Assembly (NCBI RefSeq): GCF_000002075.1 | Contig: NW_004797726.1 | Span: forward strand, 542,335 to 606,334 | Reading direction: 5' to 3' | Origin: Aplysia californica | Lineage: Eukaryota | Length of the DNA stretch: 64,000 bases | In this document: positions 12,883 to 45,400 of the stretch, one piece after another | Layout of the letters: each line of letters starts with the position of its first letter | Position numbering within the stretch: position 1 is the stretch's first letter | Program-made: the position numbers and the translations under genes | The notes under the pieces: generated by a model | Told to the model about the DNA's origin: nothing | Databases searched by the model: none | Seen by the model: only the letters and a program-made list of their open reading frames with translations

Positions 12883-15800
12883 TATGAGAGTGAGTAAGTG
12901 AGGGGGGGTGCACACACATATATATATATATCAAATGTATGTGAGGCAGCGTGGTGAAATTAGGCGCTCGTCAAAATAATGAAAGCCAAGAAATTGGAAT
13001 TTTCCCGCAGGCTAGGGAATTTTTGTTGAATTTTTGTTTTTTTGGTTCAATAACTTTCTTGCCCATTAAAGAGCGCATTTTCATTGAAAACATTGATTAA
13101 AGGCGGAAGAAATGTAAATTTTCAGTTCCCACGGACTCTCAAGCTAAAGAAATAACTCAAATTTGGCAGCCATTTTCTCGATAATTTTACCTCTGAAACC
13201 AGATGACCCTCACCTCCTTCAGTCGCACATATCTCGACTTCTATTCAACATGGATGGATATTAATATTATATTCACCCAAAACAAGGAAAATGGACAGGC
13301 CTTAAGATGGTACCATCAACTCTGTATTCCCAAAAATTGACGAGAGCCTGATTCCACCGCGTCGTGCCCCTTATTGAAATGGCATTATATTTTATATGGT
13401 CGTTAGACCTTGTTAGGTTGCAAGATCACTTGAAAGCTCCTGTTATCACTGCTCCCGTAGAAAGATGACATTATGTGTCTAAAAATATGATAGATGTGTT
13501 GATGATGTAAACTAAAACTAAAACATGCTTTTGTTTACTGCAGGTGAACAAAATGTCTCTGAATGACCGTGTGGAAGGGGAGCCGCTGCGCTTTCAGCTG
13601 ACTGACCGAACTCCTGGCTCAGACGTGAGGATGATTGTCCAGGCCAACTCAGAGGAGAACAAAGACACGTGGATCAAGCAGATTAGATCTATACTGGATA
13701 TGCAAGGAGATTTCCTGAGGGGTGAGTCTACCTACAGCTGTTTCTGGCCTTTCTCATTGTCGAGTTATTGAGTGTTCTTTTACTCTGTTTTGCGGAAACG
13801 TGCATTACCCGACTCTGGAAGAACTTTAAAATTGTGTTTTGGTCGTTGATTTTGAACTTTTCATGTGTTGTCTCACTTTATGCTCGACTCAGCGGATCAA
13901 TTAAATGGAAAGAAATGGAAAAAAGAAAACGTAGTTGTGAATGACAATGATCCACACTATGTAAGGTATTTTGTAACCATTTGGTTGAGAGACTTTGTTC
14001 GAAAATGTAGTCTGTCTATAGCATCATTGAGCACATATTAGGTTGATAGTATGAAATGGAAAGAGGACTGATAATTGGGTGATAATTCAAGTATTAGGTG
14101 CTGCCATTCTTTGAGGGTGATATGAGGTAGTTCACCAGCTTCTGTTTCCTTCTCGCAGAGGGTTTTACTCTTAGTTTGCACATGCTACAATTTGGTGCTA
14201 AATAATCTTAAGTGGGACCTACATTGTGTTTTGCTTTTTATCAGTAGGAAAAGAATGATGGTATCTCGTTCTCCATATGTTTACTCTACAACTTTTTACA
14301 GCTAGATAATATTTACTGTTGTGTTTTTTTGGTTAATAAAGAAGGCTATTTTAAATATGATTTCCAAGTGTTACTATGCTTTTCTTTCTTTCGTAATCTA
14401 ACTTTGCAGACAGTCAGACTGCTTTTAAGGATGCAGTTTTTGTTTAAAAAATCGTGCAATGAGAATAGACACCTCCTTAGTTGCAAAGAATTATATCTTT
14501 ATTTATGGCCTACATAATATGATCTATGTTCATCTCTTTAATTAACTTTGCAGTATCACAGCAGAGTTTTGAGATGAAAATGGACCTTAAATTTTTCTGT
14601 ATATAAGAAAGCTTACCAAAGTATACTTGAGATTTTTAAAAATCTCGAAGAACAGTGAGTTGGCTGAAGATATGATTGCATATGTTGATAATCTTTACCC
14701 CACATGTATCGTCTCTTTTCTATTGTATTTTCTTTTGTTTTCTCCAGCTCTCCAATCTCCAATAGCTTATCAGAAGGAGCTCACAAAGGAATTGTAAGTT
14801 TTATGCGTGCAGTGTGTTTGCTTTGTCTTGTTCACTTCTTGACTTCTTTCTTCTAGAATGCTACAATTTTTGTCATATCGTAGTTTTGTGGTTTGCTACT
14901 TTTTTTGTTTTGGCTCATGGGGTGTTTTTAAGGGTTGAGACAAGCTGTCAAGTCTTTTTCTCCCTCCTTTTGATTTTGTTCTTTCATTTCTGTTTTGAAT
15001 TGTGTTTGATTCTTAAAGCTTTCTCCTTTATGAGTATTCCTGTTCTGCATCTTACTATGGCATGTTTGTGCGCAGATGCTGGATACAGTTATTGTTTTTC
15101 AGTATTTTCCTTCCTTTTCTGTTTCATTCTCACTGACGGCAGGTGGTTGATGAAGGCTCTAAAGTTTTCTGGTCCTTAATCTTCTCAGTGGTACTTTTAT
15201 CATAATCCATACTTGATGAAGTCTTCCTCTAACAGTGCTGTCTGGCTATATCTCAAGTAATCCTCATCTTGTACTCCTTTTTCTTGTGAAGAATCGTGTG
15301 GCCTATTTATATTTCAAGGAGCATGTATCTCTCTCTGACTGACCAGATATTTAGAGGCATTATTTTCTTCCTGCTTTTCCAGTGATATTAATGTCCTTAT
15401 CAGCAGTGTGCTTTCTTTCACTCTTCAATCAATCCTGTGCTGGGATGTATGTTCAGATCTGTTCAGGTGGTAGATACAGAAAAAAGAGTTACTCTCATTT
15501 CGTCAAGCAGTATAATTCTCTTCAATGTGTAGTTTGGTATCCTGTTGAATCAAAGCTTCTCTCTATGATCTCTGCTATGCAAGGACTAAATCTTTGACTG
15601 TGGATAGCCTTTTCCCATTGCATAGTCTATATAGATCTCTTCCCACTGTATTTTTTTTTAAATCCAAGAATCCTCCCTTCCCCTCCCATCCCCCCATCCC
15701 CCCATCCCCCTTCCCGTCCCCTCGTGGGTGGTTGGTGGGTGTTCTGGTGTGGTTTGCTCCTTCTTTCCTATCAAACAACTATCGTCCTTATCTCTCCTCC

Positions 15801-18410: not shown

Positions 18411-21400
18411 CGTGCGTGTCCTGTTTCGCTGTGATAGCAGCTTGACCTGTGAAGATTTTGTTGTTTTTTCAGTTGAGGCTCTAGCCCTGTGTCATCCTTA
18501 GCCGGCCGTGGTAGCATGTTCTCTCTCCCCCCGAGACTCCGGTCCTCGCGCTAGCACAGGCCTAGAGCAACAGATCACACACTCTGAGTGAAGGGGCATT
18601 ACATATTCAGTCTGCCGAGTGCACTAACCATAGCAATCGTCATGCAGCAAACTAAGGTTTAATGGGAAAAAAAACAATCTTTGAGCAGTCTGTGTTCCAA
18701 CCAACCAACCAACCATCCAACCAACCTACCTACCTACCTACCTACCAACCACCAAACTACCTACCTACCAACCAACCAACCAACCAACCGTACACAATAG
18801 ATCTCAGAGCTTCAGGAATCAGATCTGCCGGTGATCACAATTTGCCTTAAGGGAGATCTGTTGTGTTTTCCAGTGTAGCTCATGCATTTGTGGAAAGTGT
18901 AATATTGTTGTTCTTCGATGAAAGGAGGATGGATATTGTGTTTGATGTTATCAAGGAGACAGGATTTTCGCCAACTGACATAAACTCTGTGATGTAGCCA
19001 AAAGCGGGCAAATGTTTCAGGATGGAATACTTGAGATCAATACTATCAATTAATTAAATGTATTTTTTGCTGCAATGATACCCTCATAATCTATGCAATA
19101 GAGGCGTTCACATGCGTATGACTTAGTGAATGGGTGCGTGCGTGTGTGTGTGCGCGTGAGTGTGTGTTGTGTGTGTGTGTGAGTGTGTAGACATATATTA
19201 ATGTTGGCGTCTGTAGTGAGCGCTCCTTTGTTAACCTTCGTGCTGATGGCTCCCACTGGTGTCGTTGTAGCCGGGCGTGTCTGTGTATGCTTTCATCTCT
19301 CATTTTGGTTTGTACTGTTTCATTTGAAGTGCATTTCTTTCTCATTGTTCTCTCGTGTATGTATGTATGAATAGTTTTTTGCTTGAGTCGGTTCATGTCC
19401 GGGTTTCAGTTTTGCATCATGATTTGTTTTTCCAGTGTGTTGTCAAGTGTTTCTATTTGCTAAATTTTTCTCAATCATTTTATGACATGTTGTATTCACA
19501 ACATTCCTCCATTTTTAAAAGTTATTTAGTTATGGCAAGTTTCTTTGCTAGATTTGGTCACGATACAAAGTGGTTGTTTTTTTTTTTTTATAGTATTTTA
19601 ATGGAACAGATTGCTGTCAACTCAATCTCAGAACTATTTAGAGAACAAAGGTAACCAAAATAAGAGATACTTTGAAATCATCCATTAAATATGTACCTGT
19701 TTCTGAATTCAGGTCTACTCAAAACAACCAGATTTGAAGAATAATTTCTATATGCTTTTCTAATCTCGATACATTCTGATACACAGGAAAAAACTGCCAT
19801 TCGTTTTCCTTTTTCGCAATGGAATTGAAATTTTAATAAAAGTAATATTTATAAAAGTTTATCCGTCAGTATTTGACGATGAATTGATGTGCAGTATTCT
19901 TTCAACAATGACCCCTTCAGCCATAATCTGAATTGTTGTGTCCAAAGTGATCTGTTCTACCTTATAAAATACATCCCATCTTGTCGAGTTAAATACGGCC
20001 TTTCATACGGTTTCACCTGTGGTCCATGCTGTTATGGTTCATTAAGCCCTTAGTTTTAAGTTAAATGTTGTTTGTACTGTCCTTTTCAATGTAGCCTATG
20101 GTGTCCTGGGAAATGTTGCCACTGTTGAAATTTTAGATAAGGCCCATTTTGTCGTTGCAAATGAGGCTCGTGTGTTGATGTCACAGGTGGCCTGTGTTGT
20201 TGTGTCCCTTGTGACCCCTGTTGTCTTGTTAAATATGACCACACTGCTATACGAGATGTATCCCTGGTCTCGTGAGCATAGTTTTTGTTATATTAGAGAT
20301 CCCATCTGTGTTGCCTTGTAGAATGTTTCCACTGGCGTTAATATGGAATGAAGCCCATGCTTGTTCATATCCTCTCCCCCCCCCCTTCCAACCTTTGTCG
20401 TGTCTAATCATGTGTGTATTGTCATGTCAACTGGGACCAGTGTTGTGTCAAACCCATATGTTTCTAACGCATGTACTGTCACCCCACATGTTGTCTTTGT
20501 TGCGTACAATATAGTCTTTGTTGTCCTGCCAAATGCGGCCCAATATGTCTCGTCAAATTTGACCCCCCATGTTGTCTTTTGTCCCTGATCTTGTAGTGTC
20601 AGATACGGCTTGTGTTGAGGACAGTCCGTAAGGAACAGGTATTTAATTTGTAAAGGGAAGTTGACAGGAAAAACCCAGGACCATGGGGGTGTGAGTGGAA
20701 ACAATGTAACCTACAAAATGTAGCCTTTACAATAAAATTTATATTTGTGGGTGTTTCAGAAATCACGAATATCCTTGATTTTCTTGGTTGGCATTTAGCT
20801 ACTTTAGCTACTTGATATCCCTTACCTTTTGTGGTTGTTTTTTTTTCCCTCTAGATCTCGTTTCTTTGTCAAAGGTAACAACACTATAGGTTTGTGTAAA
20901 AGTGAAAAGGAGGGGCGGGGTCAATACATAACAACACAGCGCATTGTGAAAGGTAGCACCAGTGTAGAATTATCTGTTTACTCTCTAGGGAGTAGACTTT
21001 GGCTCAAGACAGATTCATAATCTGTCACCTTGTACAGAGTGAGTATGGTCTCTGGGGCCATTAGAAGTTAGGGTGTGAAGCAGGGAAAGCCATATCTGGT
21101 GAATTTCAGTTTTTCTTTTTCTACTTATCTACTTTTTTTTTTTTAACTTGAATTTCTTAGAATGTTGTCATCTCAGAGGTTTAACAAGAGGGATCATGTT
21201 CTTGCTATATCGGCTAAGCCATGTTATAAACTTTTGAATCACTGCTGCATTTGTTTTTATGTCAAGATATTTGAATTGGCTTGAAAGTTTAATGGTGGGC
21301 AAGGCTGACATTACTTAAGGCTTAGTTGACACCGCTGGGATGTATCAGCATTTACATATTGTTTTTATAGTGCTCAGTTGTTCTGTAGTTGTATGGTAAC

Positions 21401-24400
21401 AGTCACTGTCTGTTCTCTTTGAACCAGCTTGACTTTGTCTTTGTCTTTTCCCAGTATTAGAAGAATGTATTGAGTTATCCCTGTGTCTTTGAATTACAAA
21501 CTCTATTTAGCACGGCGCCATTTTTTACCATTGTTTCTTTCATCCCTGCGTGTGTACGTTGTGCATGCCTGCGTGTGTGTATCTGGCAATATCCAGTTGT
21601 CTGTGTATGGATCTGCTAAGATCCAGTTGTCTTTTACCTTTTACTGTGTGCGGGGTGTGCCTGTGTGCGTGTGTCTGACTACATCCAATCGTCTTTGCCT
21701 TGTCTGACAGATCGACGCCGGACTTCAGCAACAGCTCTGGTCCATCGGACTCGTCGCTGAGAAAAACTCAGTCTCATCCACTGAACCGCGCTCACAACCT
21801 GAGCCCGTCCAAATCTGTTGCCACCAAAACAAAATCGGACACAGTCTTTGGAGCAGCGTCCAAAAGTAAAAGTGATCGCTGCAAATCGGTGCCGGGCCCG
21901 CTCAATTCAGAGTCTTCTGGCGAAGGCCAGGATGGGGGTGGGCCGGGGGACATGTCGGCGTCCTCATCTGTAGGAAAAGCCTCATGTCCCAACTCACCGC
22001 TCGAGGCCAGCAAAGATTTTGTGCGGAACACGGCCAGTGACGCGGGATGGCGGAAAGGCTCCTCCGCTGCCGCCCCTGTCTCCGTGGAGGCCGCGGCCGG
22101 CTCTAGCTCGCCCAAACCTCGGAAGACCATCTTTGACGGGTTCCGCAACACTCTGGGCCGCAAGTCAAAGTCAAGTGACGCCGGCAAAATGGCAGATGGC
22201 ACCTCGCCCCAGTCACCCAGCACCTCCACCGGCGGGCTAGACCCATCAGCCATAAATCTCACAGACGGAGGCAATTCGGAAGGAAGGACGGCCACTCCAG
22301 AATCTTCAGACGAGGCCACTACTGCAGCAGCGTCTGCAACCGCAGCGGCAGCAGCAGCTACAGCAGCATCTTCTCTTCCTCCTTCCTCCACGACACGGGT
22401 AAGTGGACGCAATGTGACCTCGTGATGGAAAGAGGAGGTAACTTTGAATGCAAAAAAGTATATATCTATCCATCTATTTGTGTGTGCGTGTGTGTGTGTG
22501 CGTGTGTGTGTACATATATCAGTTGCCGCCCTCTCGCCTCACAGGAGTTCCTGGCTCGTTCGTTTGTTCATACCTTAGTTTGCTGCATTCGTTAGTGCAC
22601 CATCCTCTGATGGTAGACATGGTTGGTTGGTTCGGCTGCTCGTCCGACTCCCCGTATGCCCCTGTCCTAGTTTCATACCTTGCAATCTTCACTGAGTTCA
22701 TACGTTGCCCCGGAGCACTCACCCTCCCTCCTGGTCAAGTGACGGCCACGCCCCCTACCCGTGAGTGATCAGCTGTCACTTGAGTCAGAGACAAGTGGGA
22801 TACACCAGGGAACACATAAGTCGTTTTTCATTCTGTTTTGTTCTCTACATTTCACCGTTGCAATCTACGACGTATAGATGAGTAGTTTTCAAACAAACAT
22901 ATTGGAAAACTAGTTGAGATGACAAGACTTTGATTTGTGAAAGCAGTTTTGTGTAGTGGATGGATGCAGGCATAAATTCTTGAGAGGACTTCATTTCGAG
23001 TGTTCATCTCTAGGATATTAATTGAGTAATGAAAGTGGACCGATATCCAGCGAGTGAGATTTTCAAATTAATATATTATGTTCATTCTACAATTTTATGT
23101 TTCATGAGTTCCAGAGAATATCATAGTGTCATATCTTAGTGTTATTACAATTTATTATTCTTTTAATAACATTCTCTTCTACTCTATGTTCATCCTGATT
23201 GAGACGGGGGTATTAACGAACATTTCACGATCACGAACAATGACTATGTAAACCACTCAGCTCTGTTTCTTTCGTTTGTTTGTTATGATTAATTCCCCCT
23301 TTTTGTTATGACTGTGAGAACTACTGCTTGCCTATGTACGACTTATGTCCGTTCGCATGCATTACTTTTTTGGAATATACGTGCATTTTGCTAAATTAGT
23401 TGTCTCCTCTCGGTTCAGTGTTTTCAGCGCTGAGCGGATCTCTTCCTTTTTCCTGTCAGTATTTTCATAAGTTGAATTGGAACTTGATAAAAGAGTGTGC
23501 TTGTAATGGGAGTTGTAATAACGTATTTGTCATTTCTGAAGATCAAGTGTTATTTCACATGTTAGTGGGGAGCGTATGCAGATTGATTTCCTGCTGATTT
23601 CCGGACAGAGCTGAGAGCAACCTCACAGCTCAGTTCATTTGATATTTCATGAGAAAATGCCTGGTTACATTGCATGCCAGTGGCAGGACTCGTGGCTACG
23701 ATGACTCCACGGAGACTGTACCTGGCTTTGTGAAAGAACAATGTGGCCACATGAGAGAAGGATTGTAGTGTATGGCCATGTGTGAGAAGTGTGTGTGTGG
23801 CGATGTGTGAATAGTGTATGGTTATGTGTGAGAAGTGCGTGTATGGTGATGTGTGAATAGTGTATGGCTATGTGTGAGAAGTGTGTGTGTGGCGATGTGT
23901 GAATAGTGTATGGTTATGTGTGAGAAGTGTGTGTGTGGCGATGTGTGAATAGTGTATGGCTATGTGTGAGAAATGTGTGTATGGTTGTGTGAGGGTACAG
24001 TTAAAGTGGTGGGGCTAAGTTCCAAATAGTTTGGTGTTTGCGTGGCCACATGAGAGTAGAGGAACAGTTGTGTGTGGTTACATGGAAGTAGCTATGAATA
24101 TGTGGCGATATGAGAGTATTGTGGCATTTCTGTGGCTACATGAGAGTAGAGGAATAGTTATGTGCGGCTGCATGAAAGTAGAAGGACAATTGTGTGACTT
24201 CTTGAAAGAGTTGTGGCATTTCTGTTGCTCCATATGGGAGTAGTGAACAGTTGTGTGGCAATTTGAGAGAGTGGTGACTGTATTACATCGAAAGAGTTCG
24301 GTGCCAATACATGTTTGAGACTTAACATTGTGGGTTATCTGTCTAATTGTATTGTGGCTGAGCATAATTTATGGAACATTAGGCACCCCAATGTCAAACA

Positions 24401-27400
24401 CGTCTGCCTTGATGGCTTTCATAGTGCTACTGTTCAGTCTGTACCAATTATTTATTCATTTATTTATTTTATCTTTTTTGGCAGTTGTTGGGTTTTTTAA
24501 TTGTTCCTATTTTCATTTGACTTTTTAAAAAATATTTTTTTGTGTTATGATCTCCATTCTTTGTCCTGTAATATCTCCACTATGCTCCTTACTGCCAGAA
24601 CTTCGTCGGAGCCAAGGTGTGCAATTGCTAGTGGAAATGAACACAGCTGTGCGAGGAGTGGCGATAGGTGTTTTGATAGGCAATTTGTTATCTTTTATAG
24701 CAGTAGTAAACCTGAACATTGTATTTGAATAGAGTATTTGTCGGGTTTTCTTTCAGAGCTGGCTGAAAGATGTAGAATTACTTGAGACCCCCCCACCCCG
24801 GCCAGTATTTTCGTAGTGTGGAAGGTTGCTCTTTTAATTCCGAGACCTACCTCAGAACTACCAAGTTCTAATTTAACTGCTCAATGCCTAATTTTGAGAA
24901 ATATGAGGTCCAAATTTTTTAGTTCCACAGTATGTCAAGCTTTTCCGAATGCAATTCTTTGAATATCTTGACGACTCGGAACATTTTTACTAGTTTGATA
25001 GAGCAGATCGAGCATTTGTTTTCTGGCCACTTGGTCCTAATAACTCAAAACGACTAAAAATATCAGATAAAACTTTGTAATTCGGAGGTAACGAATAGTT
25101 GAAACTACGAAGATGCTCTGTCACATCTTTTTGCCAACCTACGCACTCATTTGTCAGAACAGCAGTACCACTTAAGGACTACGCATTGAAAACTCATTGT
25201 CTGGCAATTTTCTGTCAACAATAACAACGAAAAGTCCATCCGTGATTTTGGTTAAAACCCTCCTATTTGTAATTCGGCGCCACATTTTCTTTTTTTACGT
25301 ATTATTTATAGGTGAAGATCACGATATGGATGGCTCCCCTCATTGAACGTGTTTTTTTTTGTTTTTTTAAAAATTATTAATATTTATTAATTTTTTAAAT
25401 TTTTAAAGTCACCCCGTCTATTCATGGGAAAAAAGCAGAACATATCCCACCTGTAGCATTTCAGTGTATTACTTTGTTATAGATTTATTATGTGTTTGTG
25501 TGTTTATGTGTATGTTTATGTATTTCTGTCTGTGTCTGGGTTCGTGTGTATGTGTTTGTAAGAGAGGTAACGAAACGATCACGATTTCTGTTGAAATAGA
25601 TGCATGTGTGTACATTTCCATTCTTCCATACATACTCTGGCTTCAGTCAGTTCAGCCCACTGTTTTGATTTTTTAACGACATTAACATTTTGTTCTCCCC
25701 TTTATGTGGCCCTCAATAACCGTCCGGGTCACGGGACTGTCATGTTTGCTAAAACTACACTGTCATTGCCATCATTGTTTTGCCACTGTATCAAAAGCTT
25801 TGTGCTAATCTAAACTCTAGGGGGTCATACATATTTATTCTATTGTAAAGTTGTGCGCTGTTGGCGAGAGCTGACAAAGTATTCGTTTTGTTGCTTGGGC
25901 AGGTGGGGGGGGGGGGGGGGGAATGTATGTTTTCCAGCCTCTTTGTGAATGACGAATAATTCATTACTAGCAAGTGTCTATACTGCCAAGCCCTGTCTCC
26001 GCACAGCTGGCTCATAGCTTCACAAAACCGTTGAACGTGCTTGTCCTCTCGCAGTACACATGTATTAATTACTACGCATTACCCAAAAGCGTTCAAGTTG
26101 AAATAGGGGCCTACGATTCCCACTCTTTTTTTTTTTTGCCTTCTTTGTTCGCTTGACCTTACTTAAAAGAAGCCAGCCTGACTGGCCTGTAGAATGACCT
26201 GCTTGGTTCTGTAGAAGGTGGAGCTTCAATATTAACTATAATAATGACTATAATATTATTAATAATGGTGTAATAGTTATTAACAATGAAGTTTAGTTGA
26301 AGAATTTAGGCCTGTCGACTCACGAGATGTTTGGTTCAGCAATAAATTGAACAGAATCCGTTTCTCACCCCTCATGCTCACCCCTTGGTCAACCTGATAG
26401 GTTTGGTTTGTTGCCATAAGATTGGTTTACAACCGTAGGTTGGGGGACACTGTCGTAGACAATGACTGTGTGTNNNNNNNNNNNNNNNNNNNNNNNNNNN
26501 NNNNNNNNNNNNNNNNNNNNNNNNNNNNNNNNNNNNNNNNNNNNNNNNNNNNNNNNNNNNNNNNNNNNNNNNNNNNNNNNNNNNNNNNNNNNNNNNNNNN
26601 NNNNNNNNNNNNNNNNNNNNNNNNNNNNNNNNNNATGTGCGTTTGTGTATGGGCGTGTTTGTGTATGTAAGTGTGTGTTTGCGTGCGCGTATACTCATCC
26701 TAACCTTTGATATTGAAAGGACCACTTTGCTGTTGGCTGTAGATTACTTTGCTGTTGGCTGTAGATTACTCCTGATGCTCAACGGTAATGGTCATAACTC
26801 TTACAGAACGGATAACTTGTCACTCTCTACTGGACAAGACATGCTGATTTTCCGGATAAATCCGATAATCCGGATATCTTGAATTATCCGGATATTTCAT
26901 GATATAAAATCGTCTTGATACAAGTGGTATTAGACAGCATCATTAGTGTCGAAAGCCATTCACTTAAGTCCGTTTGAGTAAATGTACTTTTTACACTAAA
27001 GACAAAAATGAGTTTTTGTAGTTATTCCTATCAGGGCTCATGAAAAGCCAGAAATTTTCTGTCTTGACCATAGCATTGAACTACATTTTGGTTATGTTAA
27101 AAGTTGCCTCTTTGGTCAAGCTTTGGGAGGGTGTAAAAATAAAAATAAAAGATTCATCAAATTGGACTTGAATGGATTTCTTGCCACAGGGACGATATAA
27201 TCCGTAAGTTCTGAGTCCCTGCACGTGCGCGTTTCCATGGGGGACCGAAAAGTTTAGGACTTTTTTCCCGTAGCCAGTTGGCACCCCTGCTGTACGGGAC
27301 GAAAGAGTTCCGTTTTCTGTTCTACCTAGCAGGACGCTGTCTCAGCCTACCGTAGCTGCCTCATGCAAATGCCTAGGTCAGTCGGTCAAAGCAGATACGG

Positions 27401-27615
27401 TTTATAAAGATGTTGTCGTGACGGTTTACAGAGATATTGTCGTGAATGATTGCATCGACTTTCGCTTTATGATATTTATGTGTATGAGTTGGACTAGGAG
27501 AAGACAGGCCTACAGTCTGTCGTGGTTTGATTGGGTGAATTCGTTTTGAATGGTGTCCATATTTTGGAAGCAAATCTTTTGGATTTGTGTGAATGTGTGT
27601 GTGTGCGTGTGTGCA

Positions 27616-27647
<32 letters not shown>

Positions 27648-30600
27648 CGACAGACAGAGACAGACAGAGATCGACTTGAAAGTAAAAGTGAAATCTTGTA
27701 ACTAACTTCTGTGTCTTGTAAGCAAGTAGATCTGAACAAGTCAGATGCAAAGAGAGAGGAGGTGAGGGGGGAAAAAGAATCTTGACATAGAATAAAGCTG
27801 TTTGAGAGACCCATGGTACCTCTCGTAATGTGGGGCGCACAGCTGAGGTCTTCAATATCATAATTACTATAAAGTCTATTACTATATCCCCTGTTCCTTT
27901 GCCACTCTTAAAACTTTTCTCTTTCTGACACTATTTTCCATTTCTTTTTNNNNNNNNNNNNNNNNNNNNNNNNNNNNNNNNNNNNNNNNNNNNNNNNNNN
28001 NNNNNNNNNNNNNNNNNNNNNNNNNNNNNNNNNNNNNNNNNNNNNNNNNNNNNNNNNNNNNNNNNNNNNNNNNNNNNNNNNNNNNNNNNNCCCCTCCTTC
28101 TCTCTCTCAGCCTGTGTCTGTCTCTGCGTTGTATGTTGTCCAACTGACGTTGATTTGAATTACAATGCATTATCGTGATTTGGACTTGAGTGCACAAGTC
28201 CATGTACTAATTCAAGCTGTGCTTCAGCGCTTTGTTACATCAAACTATAGTTATGTTGTTTTTCTAGTTTCAACAATTACTTGTTTCTCCTGTATGAACT
28301 GATCTTGTAAACATATTTTGTTAAATCTTGGTTGTTCTGTTTTGTTTTTTCAGTTGTCTGAAATAATCTTTGTGTAAGTGTACAGAAAGAAAATCTCCTC
28401 CCTTTATGAATTCTACCTAATCATGTACTGTCGTGTACATATTTATACTCTTTCCTGTTGTTTTTGAAGGAGATGCATGGGAAATGCGAAGAACAAAGAT
28501 TTTTTTTTTTTAGTGAGGAGAATGTAGCAAATTGAGCATTTGTACAGAAGGAGAAACAATGGCTGGCTTTTTGTTCCATATTGTTTCTTCAGTGTCTGAA
28601 AGTGAGCTTTGAACCTGTTTTTGTCATATTTATTCTTTGACGGGACTATTCAGTTGTTTGTTTTGTTGGGAATTTTGTTTTTGTTTTTCCACTTGTTTCT
28701 CCAATTCAAATGTGCTAATGTTCTATCTCAAATCTGAATAAAGTCTGTCTGATACTTTGAAATCTAATAATTTCTCCTTTGTTACTTTATCATATCTTAT
28801 GTTGTGCAGTGCCATACCTAAGTTATATACAAAGATCCCGGTTGCTATGGAATTTTGTTCTTTTATTTTGTTCTAAATTTTTCAGCTTTAATTTGTCTTA
28901 AAGTCTTACTGTTTTTGTTTAGTTGTGTCTAGGTTTGGTTAAGTTCTTCTGGGCTGGTAGGGAACTGTGTGATATCGCTTTAAAAATTTATTTTTGAGAA
29001 ACATTTACCAGACAGGTGCTCATTGTCCACAATAGTTTCCTCTTGGATTCCTGGAAACAATTTCAAGCCACAGACTATAGAAAAAAATATTTTCACCTGT
29101 TTCAAGGATTTAGGTCTATGCCCTAAATAATGTATGAATCAGGTTTTTCAGCTGGAAGAGCTTAGACGTTCTCATATTTTAGGACCGTTAGTTTGATTCC
29201 CAACTGAAAGTAAAGTTCAGACACTCAAGTGGTTGATTGTGTAAGTGGATTAATTTGTTGCTTGCACAGTTTCTAGATGTATCAGTCGTTTGGAGTGAAT
29301 TTTCTCTGGAAAATAGTCGAATTTCAAAATTCTACAATTAGGAATGATTTCTAGCCATAATATGCCTGTTTAGGCAAAGGAGTTAAATTGACTACTAGGG
29401 CATCTTGTGGATATGGCTTGTCTTTTACGACAAGGTGGCTGGACAATAGGAAAACCTCAAGGAAATTTCAACAAAAATGTCTGACAACATGACACCTACA
29501 CGGACGCCAAGTTGTTGTATGTAAACTTGTGCATTTTTTTTTTTCAAAGAAAGATATGTTTTTCAAGAATTGGGAAATGAAAGAATGTTTTTTTGTCAAC
29601 GTTTGTGTTGATGTAGACTACCAGCTCTTTTGTTAGGCTTAGCTGGGACTGATGGGGTGGTCCTTAGACCTCAACTGCTACAGACTACAGCCAATACTTT
29701 GATGTACCGGAATGCTATGGAAGAGATTTGTTTTGATCTACCACAAGTGGCAATATGAACAGGTGCACTGTTTTCATATGGTTTTTGTATGTGACCAATT
29801 TGGAAGTGTGCTGTAAATAATATTGGACTGCCCAAGTTACTAAATAGTCCTGTCATAACTGAAGTGTTTCAAATACTTTGAATCCTTAAAGTGAGGTTAA
29901 ATTGTGCACCTAAATGAAATACACAGGATCACATTATTTAGTTCTTAAAATCAAGTCAGACAGAAGGATGAAAATGAAAATATTAATGCCTCTTTCAACA
30001 CATTTTACTTTACACCGAGGAGCTGAGATGGGTAGATTGGAACAGGTCCGAAGTAAACGAATTTCTAATTAATAAATAGCTGTTCTCTATGACTAGTTTG
30101 GACTGGACTAATGAAGAGCTGTGTTCCAGAGCCAGAATGCTGGATGCTGCTACATTTTCTAAGGAGCAACGAGCGGTACAGCGATGTCCAGTATCACTGA
30201 TGAAGGAGACAAGTCGTGTTGCCATGCTCTCTGAGACATGGATCAAGAAAGCATCCAAAAGTTTCCATATTTCGGGGGAGGTAGACATGTTTTGGAGAAA
30301 ATAGTTTCCATACCTTCATCTAAATCAAGAGTTTCGAGGGGATTGTTGTTGATGTACATTTTGATCTCTTGCGTGAGACTTGACTGGCCTACTCTTACAA
30401 AACTGGTGGAGTAAGATATGTATGAATACATCTTTCAGGCATGTTCTTGTGTTTATCTCCCCTACTTTGGAAACTTTTGGTGCGTCCTCTAGCACTGTTT
30501 GAACTGCAAGCCTCTACACACGAGCAAGCATATGTGCGCATTCTCGCACATACATACATGCACAGAATACGACATGCATATTATATATATACAGGGTCAC

Positions 30601-33039
30601 AAAGATAGTGTCATCTGCAAGACACCATACTTAACTTTGTCTGTTTTATTAATTGCAATCATTGAATATGTACTATTTCATGATTTTAGCCAAATGGAGT
30701 GATAGAGTAGTTGTTCGCGTTGATGATTGTACTTTGAACTACTTTTGAGCTGACAGGAAAACGAAGAGGTCCACCAAACAGTCACGCCCTGTTCTCCGGG
30801 CTCGTGTCATTTTGGCCACATGCATGCTGCTCTAGCTGTGTTTGCTGTGAACCCATTACTAACAACCATGCATCTTGAGTTCAGTGTCTTCATTCATTTC
30901 ATCTTTTACAATTCAATAAATATCTTTGCTTTGCATTTGTGGCTAACCCTTTACTGCTCTTATTTTTCAATTTGCTTCTAGAAGTATGCCTTGCAGATGC
31001 AGATTCAGACTAGAGACTAGAGATTTTAGCTTTAATTAAGTACCACCGAAAACACAAATGATTGGGCTAAGATGATGATAGCAGTGAATATGTACAGTCT
31101 ACAGGCACTACTAGTTTGATGAACTATCCCTTCTCTGGAATGTCATTGTCTTCCTTCCATCCCAGTATCCTCTACTATCAAACGCCAAGATTCTATCTTT
31201 CACTCATGAAGTGTTTCTGATGCTTTTTTAAAGGGGGTCAGACAATTAATTGCTTTGTACTCTTACCGCTATGTCCTCTGATCTTCTGCATTCCAAGCTC
31301 TTTCATATCTATCAATCCACCTGTACCCCTTTTCAAAAGTTCCGGATATTAAATTATTAAAATAGTTGTGATACAAATGGTCCTTAAACCATATGGTCCG
31401 TAAATTTAGAGTCTGCTAACACATTTTCATGGGGTCTAAAAAGCTCAAGATTGTTTTTTTTTTAGCCAATTGGCTTCTCAATTGTTAGAAGTAGTATTCA
31501 GGAATGAGGTGGGAAGAGTCCCCTTGTTTTTATGTTAAATATACATATTATGCCTCTATTTTTTTGTGGTGCAAACACTTGGTGGTGTCTTTGTTTTGGT
31601 AATCCGATGGTTCAATTCTAAGTTTAATTAATGACCCCTTTAAGAGGCAGATATCCAGTCACTGTTCTTGATATCCAGAAAAAGTGCAAGGTATAATTTA
31701 TTCTTTTTTTTTTTTTGCTTTGATTTGTAGACATATTATAATGATCAACTGAGGGGCCTACGTTCTGGTCAGTGACCCCTAGCTTCAGCTAAATTACTAA
31801 AAATGCATTATTTAATTGTGAACTCTGGATTAATCTAAAGATATAGAGTTATAGTAATACAAGTTTTGAGGCATAACGCTGTGCCTAGTAGCTCCGCCAT
31901 AGACATGAAGGTTGATGGAAATAGTCCATAACATGTATAAATTTAGTCCTAAAAAAAGGTTTGTGGCATAAATTTTCAATGGAACAATTGTACTTAACTT
32001 GAACTCGTGCTTACCCATACCAGGCACCACTCCACAAATTTTTATTTATGGCTACCTCCGCTTACATATTATATTTCATTTGCAGTTCCTTTGTGGCTCG
32101 CCAGTACTTGTGTAGATTTGCTTTTGCTGCCTTCCAACTATTCCAAGCTTAATGTCCTCATTTCAACCTTTTCCAAACGTGCAATGCATTGCTTTATTCA
32201 TGCACACAGTATGACTTCATTATGACGAGACAATCCAGAAGGTAGTGTATTGGACTTCTGTGTGGCAGTCCTCATTCAAATCCACATCGGACTGATTTTG
32301 AAATTAGGTGATTTGAGATTTCTTTTTTCTCTCCAGAGCGCTCTAAAAATGTAATCTATCATTATTGTCTATTTGGTCCTAATTGAAATGGAAGTTACAG
32401 CAGAGGTCCTGTCTTTAGAATAACACTGAAGATGAAGGGGGTTGTCAAACCCATATCTATCATGACTAAGTAGAATTTGCTGACCATATCAATGCAGAAA
32501 AGGTTTCCTAAGTAGTCACTATCCCTAACTTTGACCGTTTCGAAAAAGGCTGTAGACTGTCAGGTCATACTTTGGGGTACTGAGCTGATGAAGTGGAATG
32601 AACTGCCCCTTTGAGTGACTTTTCTAAATGGAGCATTCATCAAAATAGGATATTCAAGAGGAACTTTCATTTATTTTTTTTAAATCACCTCAAATTACTG
32701 TGATGGAGTGGATGTGTCAAAGAGAACAAGGTTCACTTAATATTATAATATAATTAGTAGACTTCGGTCACAGATTTCAAAATGTTAACACTGTGTTGAC
32801 TTTTTTGACAATTAAAGGTCAAATGTGATGAAATAGACCTCATATTATTATGTAGACTTTATAGACTTCGCAATGGTGGGAAGAACTTACAGAAATGATG
32901 TCATAGTACAGCGTATCACTAAAGACGAGGCAGAGTCAATGTAGGGATGAGGTAATAATGGTAGCCACATTATGAGGTCCTTGTGCTATGTGTTAATCTC
33001 TCTGCCCTCTATTGTGTGATGTTGATGTCGATTGTGTGA

Positions 33040-33072
<33 letters not shown>

Positions 33073-36000
33073 TAAATCTTAGAGTGAAAGCGATTGAGAG
33101 TGAGAAAGAGAAAGAATAAGAAAGAGAGAGAGATTTATCACGGTTGATTTGACATAATGTATGCTTGCTGTTCGTCTTGCTGCCATTAACTTTTGGCATT
33201 TGCTTGCTTTCCATCCATTTCCAAAAACAAAGTTTTAACAACTTGCTTTAAGTAACAAGATGAAAAAAGATAGCGTCCAGTTCTGGGAAAATTGTCTAGA
33301 CCTATAATAGAATACCGCTCCGACGAGTCGCTTGCAGAGCTTTGTCATCCTGCTGATAATCTCAGTTGTCACCACCCATCTAAACCTCCACCCATCTGTA
33401 GTGTGGTAAAAAATTCGTGGTGCCACTTATCCTTAAATATCTTTGTAATGGTTTAGTCATTGTCACCCATACTTTGCACAGCAGTTTCAGACAATTTGTC
33501 TTAACTTAATCATATTTCTCCACAACAATTGAGGCTAAATTTTAAAATCACAAAACTTGTTATAAGAAATTAACTTTATAGCGAACACTTTTTTGCTCAA
33601 AAAGTTCACAAAACATACATTCAATAAAGATAATCTCGCGATTAGAAAAAAATGACAGACTTGCTTTTAAAAGCAATATTGTCCCAGCTGTTCCTTTTAA
33701 ACTCAGTATAAACCAACCACTGGGATATCTTGGCAGTAGGCCTATCTATTAAGTAATTTTCTAGAATAGAGCTTGCAGGTGTTTACAAAAATATTGATCT
33801 GAAAAGACAAATTGATACAAGTCACTGTGCAAAAGCTGAAGAGTTATTATTTTATAGTGTAGGAGATATTTGACAATAAGTTGTGCCACGAATTTTTGAC
33901 TGCACAATAAGTAACTTCAGCCAACTTCACACGTGCTCACGTCCATACTACTACTACTCACACTTAGTAACACCCTGATGCATGCTCACTCAGTCATACA
34001 AAAAATTCTGTCGGTGCAAGCATGCATGCACTGGTCCTGGTACACACGTTCTCATTCTGCAGCCTAACATTCAAGATACATAGTGTGATGATACCGAGCA
34101 TAAATGTTTATGAAAATGTAGTTTTGATAATTATACTAAGGTTGGGGATGCTTTGATGATGATGATGATAATGATGATGATGAGGGTGATGAGGATGACA
34201 ATGATGATGAAGGTCCTGTTGGTGTTGTTAGGGTGATGGAGTTAAAGAAAAAGAAAGGAGACCTTTGGTGGTCTTCGGTCTGACTCTTGGAAGTAATAGA
34301 AATGACTGGGCAAACATAACCATGCAGCGATAGCATATAGCATGTCCTGTGATGCTGACATCATGTGACCAATTGTTTTGGATGCTGATGGAACTTTGAA
34401 AGCTGAGGGGTTCTCCCGATGACTGCATGTACTACACATTGGAGGTTGACAGGGCATTAAGCAAGCCAGGCGGTTTGTATTTGCAGTGTTGTCTTCTTCA
34501 GAGAACAAGGGACAAAGTATTTTTGGTAAGACTCAACGAGATCTATGTCTTCAATTTCATTGTTTGTAAGCTTTTGTCAGACAAAAGAACCATATACTGG
34601 CTTCTGTGGTTTAGTTGTTAGGCTGTTTGTGGTTGCGCAAAGAAGACTCAAGCCTGAAATAGCATGCCTCCCTAGTGATCTAAATTGTGTCTATGGAGGC
34701 GTAAAACACTTACAAATATTTACAATTACTAGAGAACAGTACTGTGCTCTTGGTGTTTATGGTGAGAAAGTCTGGATCCAATCAATGTCGTACAGAATTA
34801 TACCCTTTCCAGTTGTAAACAGCTGATGAACGAACATATTATGACCAATGTGACTGACTCAGCCTCAAAACCATTTCTAATCTGTATTGTTTTGCAACTT
34901 TCACTTTATTTGGACCCCACCAATAGTGGATAACATTTAAAGAAGCTTTCTCCTCTCTGAGTTATTGACAATCGTTTCACTGATTTTAAACACTAGCATC
35001 TGTGGTGTAGTGGTTGGGCTCTTTGCCATCACACACAGAAGATGTGAGTTCAGTTCCCAAGTGGGAAAGATTTTCATGGAGTACATTGGTCTGTCCTCTG
35101 GGATGTTGTGTCTCACTCAGGCCAGGTTGACCCTACTCAGAGTCAAAGACGGCCTCCTTATAATTGATCTAAATTTTGTGGATTGAAGTGTAAAACATTC
35201 ATAATTTTTAGAAAAGAGTTCTCTCTGCTGTCCTTATCTTCTGATTATCATTCATGTCATTTTCCCCCCACCCTGTCTCCCCCCTCCCCTCCGACGGGCA
35301 GCCGATAGTGGAGACCCCTCTGACAAGCGCCCGCATCCTGTTTGACTACCAAGCTATCAAGGAGGATGAGGTGACCGTCAACAAAGGGGAACTGGTGCAG
35401 ATCCTCAACATGAACCACCAGAACATGTACCTGGTCCACAGACCGGCCAATCACAACTCTCCCGCAGCCGAGGGATGGGTGCCCAGTCACATCATTGGAC
35501 CCAGAGATGGAGAGGGCAGTCTCAAGTATGTGCTCTTGATAAGTTTATTTTTTTTTACTTGTGGAAACCTGATTTTTAAAAAAATAATTTTTCTCGCTCC
35601 TCCTGTTGCTTCTGTCATCTGTTAGTCTTGCTTTGTGGTGTCGTTTGCTCCTTCCTTCCTATACACATCTTTTGTCCTTACGTCTCCTCCTTTTCTTTGT
35701 ATGTTACTCTCTATAGCAAGTGAAACATTTTTAGCACAACTTATCATTAAATATCTCTTTAACAGGTGAATCAATGTCGCCCATAATTTGCACCACAGTT
35801 TGTATCAATTTGTCTTAACTTAATCATATTTTTCCACAACAATTAAGAATAAGTTAAGAAACTTTTCTTCTTAAATTTAAAACAATGCTGCTAGACTGAT
35901 AACAAGATCTAAAAAACGAGACCATGTCACTCCATTATTAAAAGAACTGAATTGGCTCCCTGTAAAAGAAAGAATAATATTTAGAATCTGCGTCATGTGT

Positions 36001-42400: not shown

Positions 42401-45400
42401 TGAATTGCCTTATGTCCCTCACTACCAACTTAGTTTTTGTCATTGTCATAACAAAATGATTGTGATAAAATATCGTGCAAAAATGACATAGGTTATGATT
42501 GATGTGCTTTAATCTTTGTATGTACTATTACATGTAACTTAAAATAATTGTATTGAGGCAAGCTAGTTTATACTGATGTCAGGACTAATGTGTTGTGACA
42601 TACATTTTTGTTGTGTGTGCTTAAGGCTTTATTATTTGATGTGACTACTGTGTTATGATTAGTTTGTAGAGACATTTGGTTTATGACACATGTGTTATTT
42701 AGTAACCTGTGTCGAGAAATCTGTTGACCAAGATGTGATTTTTATCTGTCTGTCTACAGAGCTCAGTGAGAGAGAGGACGCCCCATGTGTCATGTGGAAG
42801 TCCACTTTTGAGAACGACTTCACTGACCTTGGCGAGATAGGGAAGTAAGTGTCAGCAGTCACACCATCGTGATAAATACTTCTCAAGATTGTGGTCTTGA
42901 CCCAGAGTAATATTGTGTAGGATTGCACAAGACGAAGGGGTTTAGTGTGTTAAGTGGTTGATTCAATAATTCCAGTACTTTCTGCCTTTCCAGTAAAAAT
43001 CAGAATTAGCCCATTTTTGTTAAAGTCAGGGCACTCTCTTAATTTGCAACAGTACCTGTAAAATATCCCTATGAAATTAATCAAGAGGAAAAACCAACTG
43101 TAATCCCCAAAGAATAAGCTAAGTTCATCATGAAAAAGTGAAATATAGGGTGGGTCTTGGTAGGGTCAATGTTACTTAGCTTGTTTTTCCCTTGACCCCT
43201 TCATATATTTGAAGCACCAATTTTTACCCTTGTTTTGTTTCACTTTGACGTTGGATTCTTTTTGTAAGTGTTTTGATTACCAAATGAGTTTGAACCAGTA
43301 TCGTGTCCATCTTATGCAAAAATGAAAACTGAAATAAATATTCAGTTTCTATTTCACTTCAAGTTTTTAAAGAATTTGTGAGCTAAAATTATATTTGCAT
43401 ACCAGAAAATCATATTGTGCAACGAATTGTTTCAAAGGGTTTAATAAAAAGGGTCATAGTTTTTGGATAAATAGTATTATTCAGACACAAAAATCACCAG
43501 GATGGAGAAGCTGAAATTGATTTTTTGATGGTCGTTTTTTCTGAACCCTGAAGGCAGTATGATTCTGATGCTTAAGAGGGAGTTGTTATCGGAACATGTT
43601 TGGTAGAAAAGGTCGTATTCACAAGTATTTGTTTAGAAAAGGTCGTATTCACAAGTATTTGTTTAGAAAAGGTCGTATTCACAAGTATTTGTTTAGAAAA
43701 GGTCGTATTCACAAGTATTTGTTTAGAAAAGGTCGTATTCACAAGTATTTGTTTAGAAAAGGTCGTATTCACAAGTATTTGTTTAGAAAAGGTCGTATTC
43801 ACAAGTATTTGTTTAGAAAAGGTCGTATTCACAAGTATTTGTTTAGAAAAGGTCGTATTCACAAGTATTTGTTTAGAAAAGGTCGTATTCACAAGTATTT
43901 GTTTAGAAAAGGTCGTATTCACAAGTACAGTCGAACCTGTGTAAGACTGCCACTCATTGTCAAGGGGAAAAGTGGCCGTATAAGACAGGTGGCCGTCTTA
44001 GGCAGGACTGATCAAGATGAAGAAAACAAACCATTTCTTTCTGAGGTCCCAACCGAAGATAGCCGCTTTGTTGTTGTTGTTATTGTTTTCGTTGTTTTTT
44101 GTTCTTTTTTTTTTTTTGTTGCTGCTTTTGTGCAAGGGTGACAATAAAACGAAATATGTCAGACAGGGAGGACCGAGTGCTATGGTAAAACAAACACACG
44201 GGTTGCCACCACTCGCAGAACGAGCGACGCTTCTGTCTCAAGTTCATGTTGACGTCCATTGTTACTTTGTTACAGACTGGGTAAACAGTGACCGCTCATC
44301 TCACTTACGATTTGTGTATGAGTTCTGAGCGGGGCTTACTTAAAGGTTATGAGAGATCGCACGCTGACCCCAATGGCAGCTGAAAATTTGTTACCTATTG
44401 GTCAACAGTGGGAGGGGCCTACGCAACATGATCGGTTGGAGGGACTACCTAACAACAACGACAGGTGATTGAATTATGACGGCTCGCCAACAACGCCAGG
44501 GGCCACTGCACAATTTATGACAAAATGTATTGGAGTCACAAAGGTGGCCGTCTAAGACAGGTGTTATTGCTTTGTGTGATAGGGGTTGTGTGTTAAAATA
44601 TGGTGGCCGTGGCCGAGTTGGACAGGTGCCCGTTTTACACAGTTAAATTGTATAGAAAAAATGCAAGGGGGGGAAATGGAAAGTGGCCGTTTGTACAGGT
44701 GGTCGTCTTATAGAGGTGGCCATCAGGGCAGGTTCGACTGTATTTGTTTTATAGTGTGTGTTTTTTTTTGTGTTGAAAGCTTACATTTGGGGGCTAATTA
44801 GATGATTCATGTAAAAAAACAAATTATAAAGTGTGTTTGTATTGAAAACAAATGACTAAAAACGGCAGCCATTTTGTTTTTCTTTTTGAACGAGTTATTT
44901 TTTTGGGTCAAAAGTTTTTTCTTATTTTTAATCAAATAAATTTGAAATATTGCAGGTAGACACTACAAGATATGATAAAACTTTACACCAAAGATTTTTC
45001 TGATTGAATAATTATTTTGATTTTGATTTATTGATAAGATATTTCAAAATCTACATTTTGACTGCCTAGTGGAAGATTCTGCTATACGGGTACGCCATTT
45101 TGAAAAGTGAAGAATGACTGAGTCCTTCACTGAGCAGTCAATTTGCCCATAGAATTGAGGTTGTTTTTTTTATTGCACTTGCCCTTAAGTTTTTGCCTTT
45201 TCCCATTTCCCTAGGGGCAGGTTCTCCATCGTCCATCGATGTGTCCAGAAGTGCTCGGGCCAGGAGCTGGCGGTCAAGCTGATCACCAAGCGACTGACCA
45301 GGAAGGAGGCTGCGGAGATTGAGTTCAACACGGTGCAGAGTCTGCAGCAGACCAACCTAGTCAAAGTGTTTGATCTGTACGAGAGCCCAGCCCATTACCT

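What the first reader, a model, noticed from the sequence alone, without database searches (positions are those of the whole stretch)
30757..30920. Hidden alternative terminal exon that would give Trio a polybasic + CaaX (prenylation) tail
Seen: inside the 13-kb intron before the SH3 exon, acceptor ctgacag| opens in phase 2 to [34 protein letters not shown] lies 80 nt after the stop and is followed by a T/GT-rich tract; a TGCATG (30821) and an ACTAAC (30858) motif are also present. It can be entered in frame directly from the phase-2 donor at 14793 or from the linker exon via the 44-nt exon at 27333. Established: Cys-aliphatic-aliphatic-Leu is a geranylgeranyltransferase-I signal, and an upstream polybasic stretch targets the plasma membrane (K-Ras4B/Rac1 logic). 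Inference: a kinase-less, prenylated Galpha-q-activated RhoA GEF isoform. I know of no described CaaX-terminated Trio/Kalirin isoform.
Basis: partly seen in the sequence, partly recalled or inferred. Interest (0 to 1): 0.82.

Follow-up and report, generated by a model that had tools for sequence, protein, structure and literature searches.

The report
Possible lipid-anchor tail exon in Trio
Inside a long intron of a sea-slug-like Trio/Kalirin gene there is a short reading frame that would give the protein a membrane-anchoring tail, but I found no proof that it is ever used as an exon, so it is more likely a chance sequence than a new isoform.

Summary
These are the AG acceptor (30755-56), the frame [28 protein letters not shown] (30758-30835), AATAAA at 30915, and in-frame entry from the donor at 14793 or through a 44-nt exon (27333-27376). 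The host gene is a Trio/Kalirin orthologue.

Three points favour an exon. The 79-nt coding part is a GC/CpG-rich island (top 1.6% of the intron). The poly(A) context is canonical. Short isoforms ending just after the preceding exon occur in many invertebrates.

Four points weigh against it:
- The acceptor is mediocre; 54 of 731 intronic AGs score as well.
- The nearest upstream donor (linker exon, phase 0) gives a different frame with no stop before the poly(A) signal.
- The tail has no counterpart in the Elysia or Candidula intron parts I could reach, nor among 238 related proteins.
- Near-equivalent composites occur by chance in this genome.

My odds are about 0.55 unused intronic sequence and 0.2 a real CaaX isoform. 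If real, it would be a new variant of a known theme (human TGAT, palmitoylated p63RhoGEF).

The parts
14748..14793 (+). Exon encoding ...[16 protein letters not shown], the end of the PH2 C-terminal extension. Its donor carries 2 nt (tt). GTAAGT follows and forms an in-frame TAA at 14795-97.
   Evidence: Homologues end or continue at this point.
21711..22398 (+). Linker exon (Ser/Ala-rich), entered with 1 nt and ending in phase 0.
   Evidence: Orthologous exons of other gastropods were found.
27333..27376 (+). Putative 44-nt cassette exon, unverified. It would link the linker exon to the CaaX frame. If joined to the SH3 exon instead, it gives a stop after two codons.
   Evidence: Its acceptor scores 11.2 bits, third best of 731 AGs in the intron. 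It lies in a GC/CpG-rich patch, 27207-27404. The donor is GTCAGT, with C at +3.
30737..30756 (+). Candidate 3' splice site (aactacttttgagctgacAG). The pyrimidine tract is weak, with a CTGAC just before the AG.
   Evidence: A PWM built from 14 real acceptors of this gene gives 3.3 bits, against 0.8-18.2 for the real ones; 54 of 731 intronic AGs score as well.
30757..30835 (+). Candidate coding part: 1 nt + [25 protein letters not shown] + TAG.
   Evidence: GC is 0.544 with 4 CpG, which places it in the top 1.6% of 79-nt windows of the intron. It is unique in the genome.
30836..30935 (+). Candidate 3' UTR up to the predicted cleavage site (CA at 30934-35). GC is 0.33. It contains ACTAAC at 30858.
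30915..30920 (+). AATAAA hexamer. TTTGTGG (30936-42) lies downstream.
   Evidence: The next PAS-like hexamers are at 31348 and 31356.
35302..35525 (+). Constitutive SH3 exon (Kalirin-type SH3). It is the normal partner of the linker-exon donor.
   Evidence: Pfam PF23587 SH3_KALRN, E=3e-24.

Best explanation
The stretch 30757-30935 is most likely ordinary intronic sequence of the Trio/Kalirin gene. It would be removed with the 12.9-kb intron between the linker exon (donor 22398) and the SH3 exon (acceptor 35302). On this reading, the combination of an AG, a 25-codon open frame ending Cys-Met-Leu-Leu-stop, and an AATAAA 79 nt later arose without selection, and no prenylated isoform is made. Shown: the features exist, they are single copy, and similar composites occur elsewhere in the genome. 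Inferred: that the stretch is not used as an exon.
For: - The acceptor is mediocre at 3.3 bits; 54 of 731 AGs in the same intron score as well, and the pyrimidine fraction is 0.60 against 0.60-0.93 for real acceptors.
- The natural upstream donor, the linker exon in phase 0, reads the exon as ENEEVHQ... with no stop before 30979-81. That is past the AATAAA and the predicted cleavage site, so the simplest splice would give a non-stop mRNA. The CaaX frame needs a 16-kb skip from 14793 or an unverified 44-nt exon with a GTCAGT donor.
- Tail-like peptides are absent from the reachable orthologous intron parts in Elysia marginata (L002), a second Elysia-like genome (L003) and Candidula (L005). The best hit has E=0.11, lies in the wrong intron, is in the wrong phase and has no stop.
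- None of 238 Trio/ARHGEF25-like proteins fetched ends in a polybasic CaaX.
- The chance background is not negligible: 15 CaaX-like polybasic ORFs in 478 kb-strand of this genome, one of them (L024 minus strand) also with a good acceptor and a PAS.
- The run holdings fit sporadic coverage. Only 18 holders appear, none recorded as RNA; six other runs of the same samples or studies, drawn from four studies, hold 0.00-0.04; and in study P2 the only holder is the run with five times more contigs.
Against: - The 79-nt coding part is a GC/CpG island whose limits coincide with the acceptor and the stop (top 1.6% of intron windows). On the + strand, most sites that pass 'acceptor at least 3.3 bits plus this composition' are real exons.
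- The poly(A) context is canonical: AATAAA, then CA 14 nt later, then a GU-rich tract.
- Only the candidate combines all features in 478 kb-strand.
- Fifteen runs with only 45-460 M letters of contigs hold the single-copy stretch, which could reflect expression.
- Short isoforms that stop just after the ...KELTKEL exon by means of an alternative exon are common in invertebrates, so an alternative last exon is expected somewhere in this region.
Confidence: 0.55

Rival explanations
1. This is a real alternative last exon read in the CaaX frame. The donor at 14793, or the linker exon through the 44-nt exon 27333-27376, is spliced to 30757 and the transcript is cleaved near 30935. The product keeps GEF2 (DH2-PH2 with its G-alpha-q-binding C-terminal extension) and lacks SH3, Ig, FN3 and kinase. 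It ends in a +7 basic stretch followed by CMLL. Geranylgeranyltransferase I would modify the Cys, and the lipid plus the basic residues would hold the RhoA-GEF module at the plasma membrane beside G-alpha-q and RhoA.
For: - The frames check.
- CMLL fits the C-a-a-L rule for GGTase-I (established knowledge; compare Rac1 CLLL, Cdc42 CVLL, RhoA CLVL).
- The composition is exon-like and the PAS context canonical.
- The composite is unique in 478 kb-strand.
- Isoforms ending right after the same exon exist in gastropod-like, bivalve, spider and tick transcripts or gene models.
- There is functional precedent. The alternative C-tail of human TGAT is needed for plasma-membrane association and RhoA activation (PMC5992656). 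p63RhoGEF sits at the plasma membrane, and membrane-restricted GEF activity suffices for RhoA signalling (PMC3722567 and PMC4592971, listed).
- The 27333 acceptor is the third best in the intron.
Against: - There is no junction or 3'-end evidence.
- The 30757 acceptor is mediocre.
- This route needs exon skipping or an unverified micro-exon with a weak donor.
- No conservation was found in the reachable relatives, and no CaaX end among 238 homologues.
- The short-isoform tails of other species are unrelated in sequence, and most stop within 1-20 residues.
- The basic residues are spread over positions -24 to -6, with a hydrophobic VILAT stretch next to the Cys. This differs from the compact K-Ras4B and Rac1 patches.
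Confidence: 0.2
2. The stretch is used as an alternative last exon or intronic poly(A) site, but not in the CaaX frame. One route is entry from the linker exon (phase 0); another is unspliced read-through into the site. It would truncate Trio transcripts after the linker as a regulatory or low-level by-product, and the CMLL frame would be incidental.
For: - The nearest donor is the linker exon.
- The PAS context is canonical.
- Some runs hold the stretch including its upstream flank, with shares of 0.95-1.00 over 30730-30960.
- Truncating devices after GEF2 are common in relatives and their tails are not conserved.
Against: - In phase 0 there is no stop before the predicted cleavage site, so such an mRNA would be a non-stop substrate unless a distal site (ATTAAA at 31348 or 31356) is used.
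- As for the other readings, direct RNA evidence is lacking.
Confidence: 0.15
3. The GC/CpG-rich patch is some other functional or relic element: an intronic regulatory element, or part of a transcript on the minus strand. A TTTATT at 30645 would be an AATAAA for the minus strand.
For: Similar GC/CpG patches without coding sense occur elsewhere in the window, at 1764-1826, 3185, 3765, 16278 and 61697. The TTTATT at 30645 is shown.
Against: There is no Rfam family above threshold; the only hit is SCARNA7-like at 19.6 bits against a gathering score of 65, and it lies at 30504-30657. There is no excess RNA structure (z=+0.87). No minus-strand ORF of at least 45 aa lies over the stretch. The stretch is not repeated in the genome.
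Confidence: 0.1

Closest known systems
TGAT (human TRIO splice variant)
   Same: Alternative splicing of Trio gives a short protein built on GEF2, with a unique short C-terminal tail containing basic, hydrophobic and Cys residues. That tail is required for plasma-membrane association and for efficient RhoA activation (PMC5992656).
   Different: TGAT has DH2 only, without PH2, so it is not G-alpha-q gated. Its tail is 15 aa with Cys at 242 and 253 of 255, which is not a CaaX box. Its membrane binding survives mutation of both Cys residues. The candidate would keep PH2 and carry a canonical C-a-a-L box. The two tails are unrelated in sequence.
p63RhoGEF / ARHGEF25 (lipid-anchored, G-alpha-q-activated RhoA GEF)
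   Same: It has the same DH-PH module with the C-terminal PH extension used by G-alpha-q. The window's PH exon matches 2RGN chain B at E=5.7e-6. The module is constitutively at the plasma membrane, and location governs signalling efficiency (PMC3722567).
   Different: The anchor is N-terminal palmitoylation, not C-terminal prenylation. It is a separate gene in vertebrates, not a Trio isoform.
Kinase-less Trio/Kalirin isoforms made by alternative last exons (Kalirin-7/-9, Trio-9; invertebrate 'ARHGEF25-like' short forms)
   Same: They use the same principle: an alternative 3' exon ends the protein before the Ig/kinase part and adds a short unique tail.
   Different: None of those tails is polybasic with a CaaX box, and they are unrelated to the candidate. 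In L007 and L008 the stop sits in a short insert between the KEL exon and the linker exon, not beyond the linker exon. Kalirin-7's tail is a PDZ ligand (from my own knowledge).
Polybasic + CaaX membrane signals of K-Ras4B, Rac1, RhoA
   Same: A Cys four residues from the end, aliphatic a1 and a2, Leu as X (the GGTase-I class), and upstream Lys/Arg.
   Different: These are small GTPases. Their basic patch abuts the Cys, whereas here five mostly hydrophobic residues (VILAT) intervene and the charges are spread over 19 residues. Whether the candidate peptide exists at all is unproven.

Membership tests
Trio/Kalirin gene (host gene) | DH-PH (SOS1/NGEF-type PH) followed by a Kalirin-type SH3, Ig, FN3 and a kinase, all on one strand | tested here: met
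   Pfam hits: PF22697 on the PH exons, PF23587 SH3_KALRN at E=3e-24, I-set and fn3. tblastn of full-length Trio-like proteins tiles exons from 8524 to 48031. PDB hits are to TRIO and ARHGEF25.
Alternative last exon | A functional 3' splice site | tested here: inconclusive
   An AG is present. The PWM score of 3.3 bits lies within the range of real acceptors (0.8-18.2), but 7.4% of intronic AGs match it, and the pyrimidine tract is weak.
Alternative last exon | Poly(A) signal with a downstream GU-rich element within the exon | tested here: met
   AATAAA at 30915-20, CA at 30934-35, TTTGTGG at 30936-42. About a quarter of comparable chance ORFs (4 of 15, the candidate included) also have a PAS within 150 nt.
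Alternative last exon | Spliced junction reads and poly(A)-ended reads | not testable with these tools
The holders are not recorded as RNA.
Alternative last exon | Conservation of the exon in related species | tested here: not met
   No homologue was found in about 10 kb downstream of the linker exon in L002 and L003, nor in the 10 kb after the KEL exon in L005. These relatives are distant and the introns were only partly reachable, so this is weak negative evidence.
CaaX prenylation substrate (GGTase-I class) | Cys at position -4, aliphatic a1 and a2, Leu or Phe at the C-terminus | tested here: met
   The conceptual translation ends C-M-L-L followed by TAG.
CaaX prenylation substrate (GGTase-I class) | The motif is the C-terminus of a protein that is actually made | not testable with these tools
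   No transcript or protein of this species could be retrieved.
CaaX prenylation substrate (GGTase-I class) | Covalent geranylgeranylation and Cys-dependent membrane binding | not testable with these tools
   This needs a bench assay.
TGAT-like membrane-binding Trio tail | A unique tail appended to GEF2 by alternative splicing, with sequence similarity to the TGAT tail | not tested
   This is an analogy only. The TGAT tail sequence was not retrieved, and the tails arise at different points (after DH2 versus after PH2).

The most novel reading that the evidence does not exclude
A gastropod Trio/Kalirin gene makes a kinase-less isoform that keeps the G-alpha-q-gated GEF2 module. It does so by splicing the PH2-extension exon (donor 14793), or the linker exon through a 44-nt micro-exon, to an alternative last exon at 30757. 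The 26-residue tail is polybasic and ends in CMLL, and it is geranylgeranylated. This would be the first CaaX-anchored member of the Trio/Kalirin/p63RhoGEF group. It would be a third, independent way of fixing this module at the membrane, alongside N-terminal palmitoylation of p63RhoGEF and the TGAT tail.
Probability: 0.2. Interest if true: 0.6.

Novelty: not a real feature. Interest (0 to 1): 0.28.

Why it matters
If real, a prenylated Trio isoform would show that membrane tethering of the G-alpha-q to RhoA exchange module has evolved repeatedly by different lipid anchors. It would also provide a natural, constitutively membrane-bound GEF2 in a classic neurobiology model.

On present evidence it is a plausible but unproven frame in one species. 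It is best treated as a cheap RT-PCR or RNA-seq check, not as a discovery.

The more solid by-product is comparative. Many invertebrates end a Trio isoform immediately after the PH2 C-terminal extension by means of stop-bearing alternative exons.

Tried and rejected
Local statistics scripts did read the whole window file.

2. I first read the 0.73-0.77 word shares as exon edges. I rejected that reading because a genome-sized run (X12, 1.18 G letters) also has 0.73, so the shares are most simply polymorphism.

3. A word search with the phase-0 reading of the exon found no protein. The linker exon and GEF2 searches returned no protein of this species, and nor did the representative search. Annotated isoforms therefore could not be inspected.

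4. The Elysia marginata hit KRTKASRSYLRS...CVLL (L002:7854-7922, E=0.11) looked promising. I rejected it because it lies upstream of the linker exon, is in the wrong phase for the tt donor, has no stop after CVLL, and is not open in the second Elysia genome.

5. The 3' UTR of transcript L006 matches the window only at a low-complexity repeat, 18642-18723.

6. I looked for a captured GTPase tail. Six-frame and DNA searches of the species' own genome find only the locus itself.

7. I looked for an intronic ncRNA. No Rfam family and no excess structure were found.

The joined frames were translated only locally, to check phase.

Full report
**What is there.** The window carries the 3' half of a Trio/Kalirin-type gene on the + strand. 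Pfam finds SOS1/NGEF-type PH on the exons at 12645-12809 and 13538-13723. It finds a Kalirin-type SH3 (PF23587, E=3e-24) on 35302-35525, and I-set and fn3 on later exons. Full-length Trio-like proteins tile exons from 8524 to 48031. The PH exon matches solved TRIO and ARHGEF25 chains, including 2RGN. The genome has 927,310,431 bases in 4,332 contigs. From memory this fits the public Aplysia californica assembly, but I did not verify the species.

**Exon layout around the finding.**
- The exon 14748-14793 encodes ...[16 protein letters not shown] and ends with two carried bases (tt) before GTAAGT.
- The linker exon 21711-22398 is entered with one base and ends in phase 0.
- The SH3 exon starts at 35302 in phase 0.
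- The intron in question is therefore 22399-35301, or 12,903 nt.

**Checking the observation.** All the stated features are present.
- AG is at 30755-56.
- The frame from 30758 reads [25 protein letters not shown], with TAG at 30833-35.
- AATAAA is at 30915-20, followed by CA at 30934-35 and TTTGTGG.
- TGCATG is at 30821 and ACTAAC at 30858.
- The tt of the 14793 donor plus g at 30757 gives Leu and then the tail.
- The 44-nt stretch 27333-27376 has cAG before it and GTCAGT after it. From phase 0 it also delivers the CaaX frame.
- The stretch and 1 kb on either side are single copy. The peptide has no second copy in six-frame search of the genome, so it is neither a repeat nor a captured GTPase tail.

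**Is it more than chance?**
- First-order Markov copies of the intron give 0.0185 composites per intron. A composite here means a CaaX-like stop, at least 5 K/R in the preceding 20 residues, an ORF of at least 20 codons, and a PAS within 150 nt.
- Real DNA is less kind. In 478 kb-strand of this genome (the window plus twenty 10-kb samples, L009-L028) there are 15 CaaX-like polybasic ORFs.
- Of those 15, four have a PAS and five have an acceptor scoring at least as well as the candidate's.
- One, on the minus strand of L024, has both. Only the candidate also has GC of at least 0.5.
- The window-wide expectation for the full composite is roughly 0.02-0.1. That is suggestive rather than compelling, given how many kinds of interesting tail a reader could have flagged.

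**Points in favour of an exon.**
- The 79-nt coding part has GC 0.544 and four CpG, against an intron mean of 0.385. It falls in the top 1.6% of windows, and the qualifying windows start only at 30745-30762. The island therefore coincides with the acceptor-to-stop interval, and the putative 3' UTR drops back to 0.33.
- On the + strand, most sites that combine an acceptor of at least 3.3 bits with this composition are real exons.
- The hexamer, CA and GU-rich arrangement is canonical.
- An isoform ending near this point is expected on comparative grounds. The related proteins and transcripts I retrieved include many that stop right after the ...[15 protein letters not shown](L/F) exon:
  - a gastropod-like metatranscriptome contig (L006, ...KEF*);
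  - bivalve-like transcripts in which a short stop-bearing insert precedes the linker exon (L007 ...KC*, L008 ...LT*);
  - Mytilus (...KETKS);
  - spiders (...KDMCSKNLRQTNENALLQN);
  - a tick.
- That exon encodes the end of the PH2 C-terminal extension. A JBC 2025 paper describes this extension as conserved and needed for G-alpha-q effector function (PMC12309612). Forms truncated at this point would therefore keep the whole G-alpha-q-gated module.

**Points against.**
- The acceptor is mediocre. A PWM from 14 real acceptors of this gene gives it 3.3 bits. Real acceptors score 0.8-18.2 in leave-one-out testing, and 54 of 731 AGs in the intron do as well.
- The simplest splice into an exon inside this intron is from the linker-exon donor (phase 0). 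It reads ENEEVHQ... with no stop until 30979-81, beyond the predicted cleavage site. The CaaX frame therefore needs one of two routes. One is a 16-kb skip over the linker exon. The other is the unverified 44-nt exon, whose acceptor is excellent (11.2 bits, third best in the intron) but whose donor has C at +3.
- The tail is not found in the roughly 10 kb after the linker exon of Elysia marginata (L002) or a second Elysia-like genome (L003), nor in the 10 kb after the KEL exon of Candidula (L005). The one tempting hit in L002 fails on position, phase and stop. These relatives are distant and their introns were only partly reachable, so this is weak negative evidence.
- None of 238 fetched homologues ends in a polybasic CaaX.

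**Expression.** This is the decisive question and I could not answer it.
- The look-up of sequencing runs lists 18 runs in 8 studies that hold 30730-30960, but none is recorded as RNA.
- Three of the holders have more contig letters than the genome, so they are probably DNA. One of these holds only 0.73 of the words, which means the partial shares are polymorphism and not exon edges.
- Six other runs of the same samples or studies, drawn from four studies, hold 0.00-0.04 of the words.
- In study P2 the only holder is the run with five times more contigs.
- This pattern fits sporadic intronic or low-level coverage as well as it fits a rare isoform.
I worked beside those places afterwards.
- No protein of this species surfaced in any protein search, so annotated isoforms could not be inspected.

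**Comparison with what is known.** The literature search found no CaaX-ended Trio or Kalirin, but the concept has close precedents.
- Human TGAT is a TRIO splice variant: DH2 plus a unique 15-aa tail with basic, hydrophobic and two Cys residues. The tail is required for plasma-membrane association and RhoA activation, although mutation of the Cys residues does not abolish membrane binding (PMC5992656).
- p63RhoGEF, the stand-alone vertebrate relative of GEF2, is held at the plasma membrane, and its location sets signalling efficiency (PMC3722567). Membrane-restricted GEF activity suffices for RhoA-driven actin polymerisation (PMC4592971).
- A CaaX tail would thus be a new variant of a known theme, not a new kind of system.

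**Verdict.** The interpretation can be neither confirmed nor excluded with the tools that were left to me.

| Reading | Odds |
|---|---|
| Unused intronic sequence | about 0.55 |
| Real CaaX-tailed isoform | about 0.20 |
| Used as a terminal exon or poly(A) site, but not in the CaaX frame | about 0.15 |
| Some other element | about 0.10 |

The test is cheap: junction and poly(A) reads, or 3' RACE.

Noticed in passing
window 14794-14799: The donor GTAAGT after the ...KELTKEL exon creates an in-frame TAA (TT|G TAA), so an unspliced transcript would end the protein exactly at ...KELTKEL. Annotated proteins of Candidula (P0014) and Elysia marginata (P0123) end at that same residue.
   Followed up: partly
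window 27207-27404 (putative exon 27333-27376): This is a GC/CpG-rich patch with the third-best acceptor of the 12.9-kb intron (11.2 bits) and a GTCAGT donor. If the 44-nt piece were included between the linker and SH3 exons, it would shift the frame and stop two codons into the SH3 exon (...MPSR*). That would make it a possible truncating cassette.
   Followed up: partly
L007:2770-2900 and L008:2340-2470: Transcript contigs of other lophotrochozoans carry a short stop-bearing insert between the ...KE(I/L) exon and the linker exon. The protein therefore ends after GEF2, and the linker sequence follows out of frame. A separate downstream ORF was called in each contig.
   Followed up: partly
L006:372-2357: The JGI metatranscriptome contig carries the same GEF2 ORF twice in inverted orientation (minus 372-1394, plus 1386-2357). 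This is probably a palindromic assembly artefact.
   Followed up: no
L002:11205-11310 and 12580-12695 (L003:11081-11178 and 12452-12572): These are two intronic islands, 0.3 and 1.7 kb downstream of the linker exon, conserved at 74-81% between two Elysia genomes whose introns otherwise do not align. They have no obvious coding frame and may be splicing-regulatory.
   Followed up: partly
window 43572-43944: A tandem minisatellite of about eleven 30-nt units (open in several frames, e.g. [10 protein letters not shown] repeats) lies in an intron of the kinase part. A second tandem array (CVCGWVDGR units) lies at about 45440-45627, next to a kinase exon.
   Followed up: no
window 30504-30657 (minus strand): A weak SCARNA7-like Rfam match, 19.6 bits against a gathering score of 65, E=0.04. 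It is most likely chance.
   Followed up: no
I worked beside them and sent none of their letters to any search tool afterwards.
   Followed up: no
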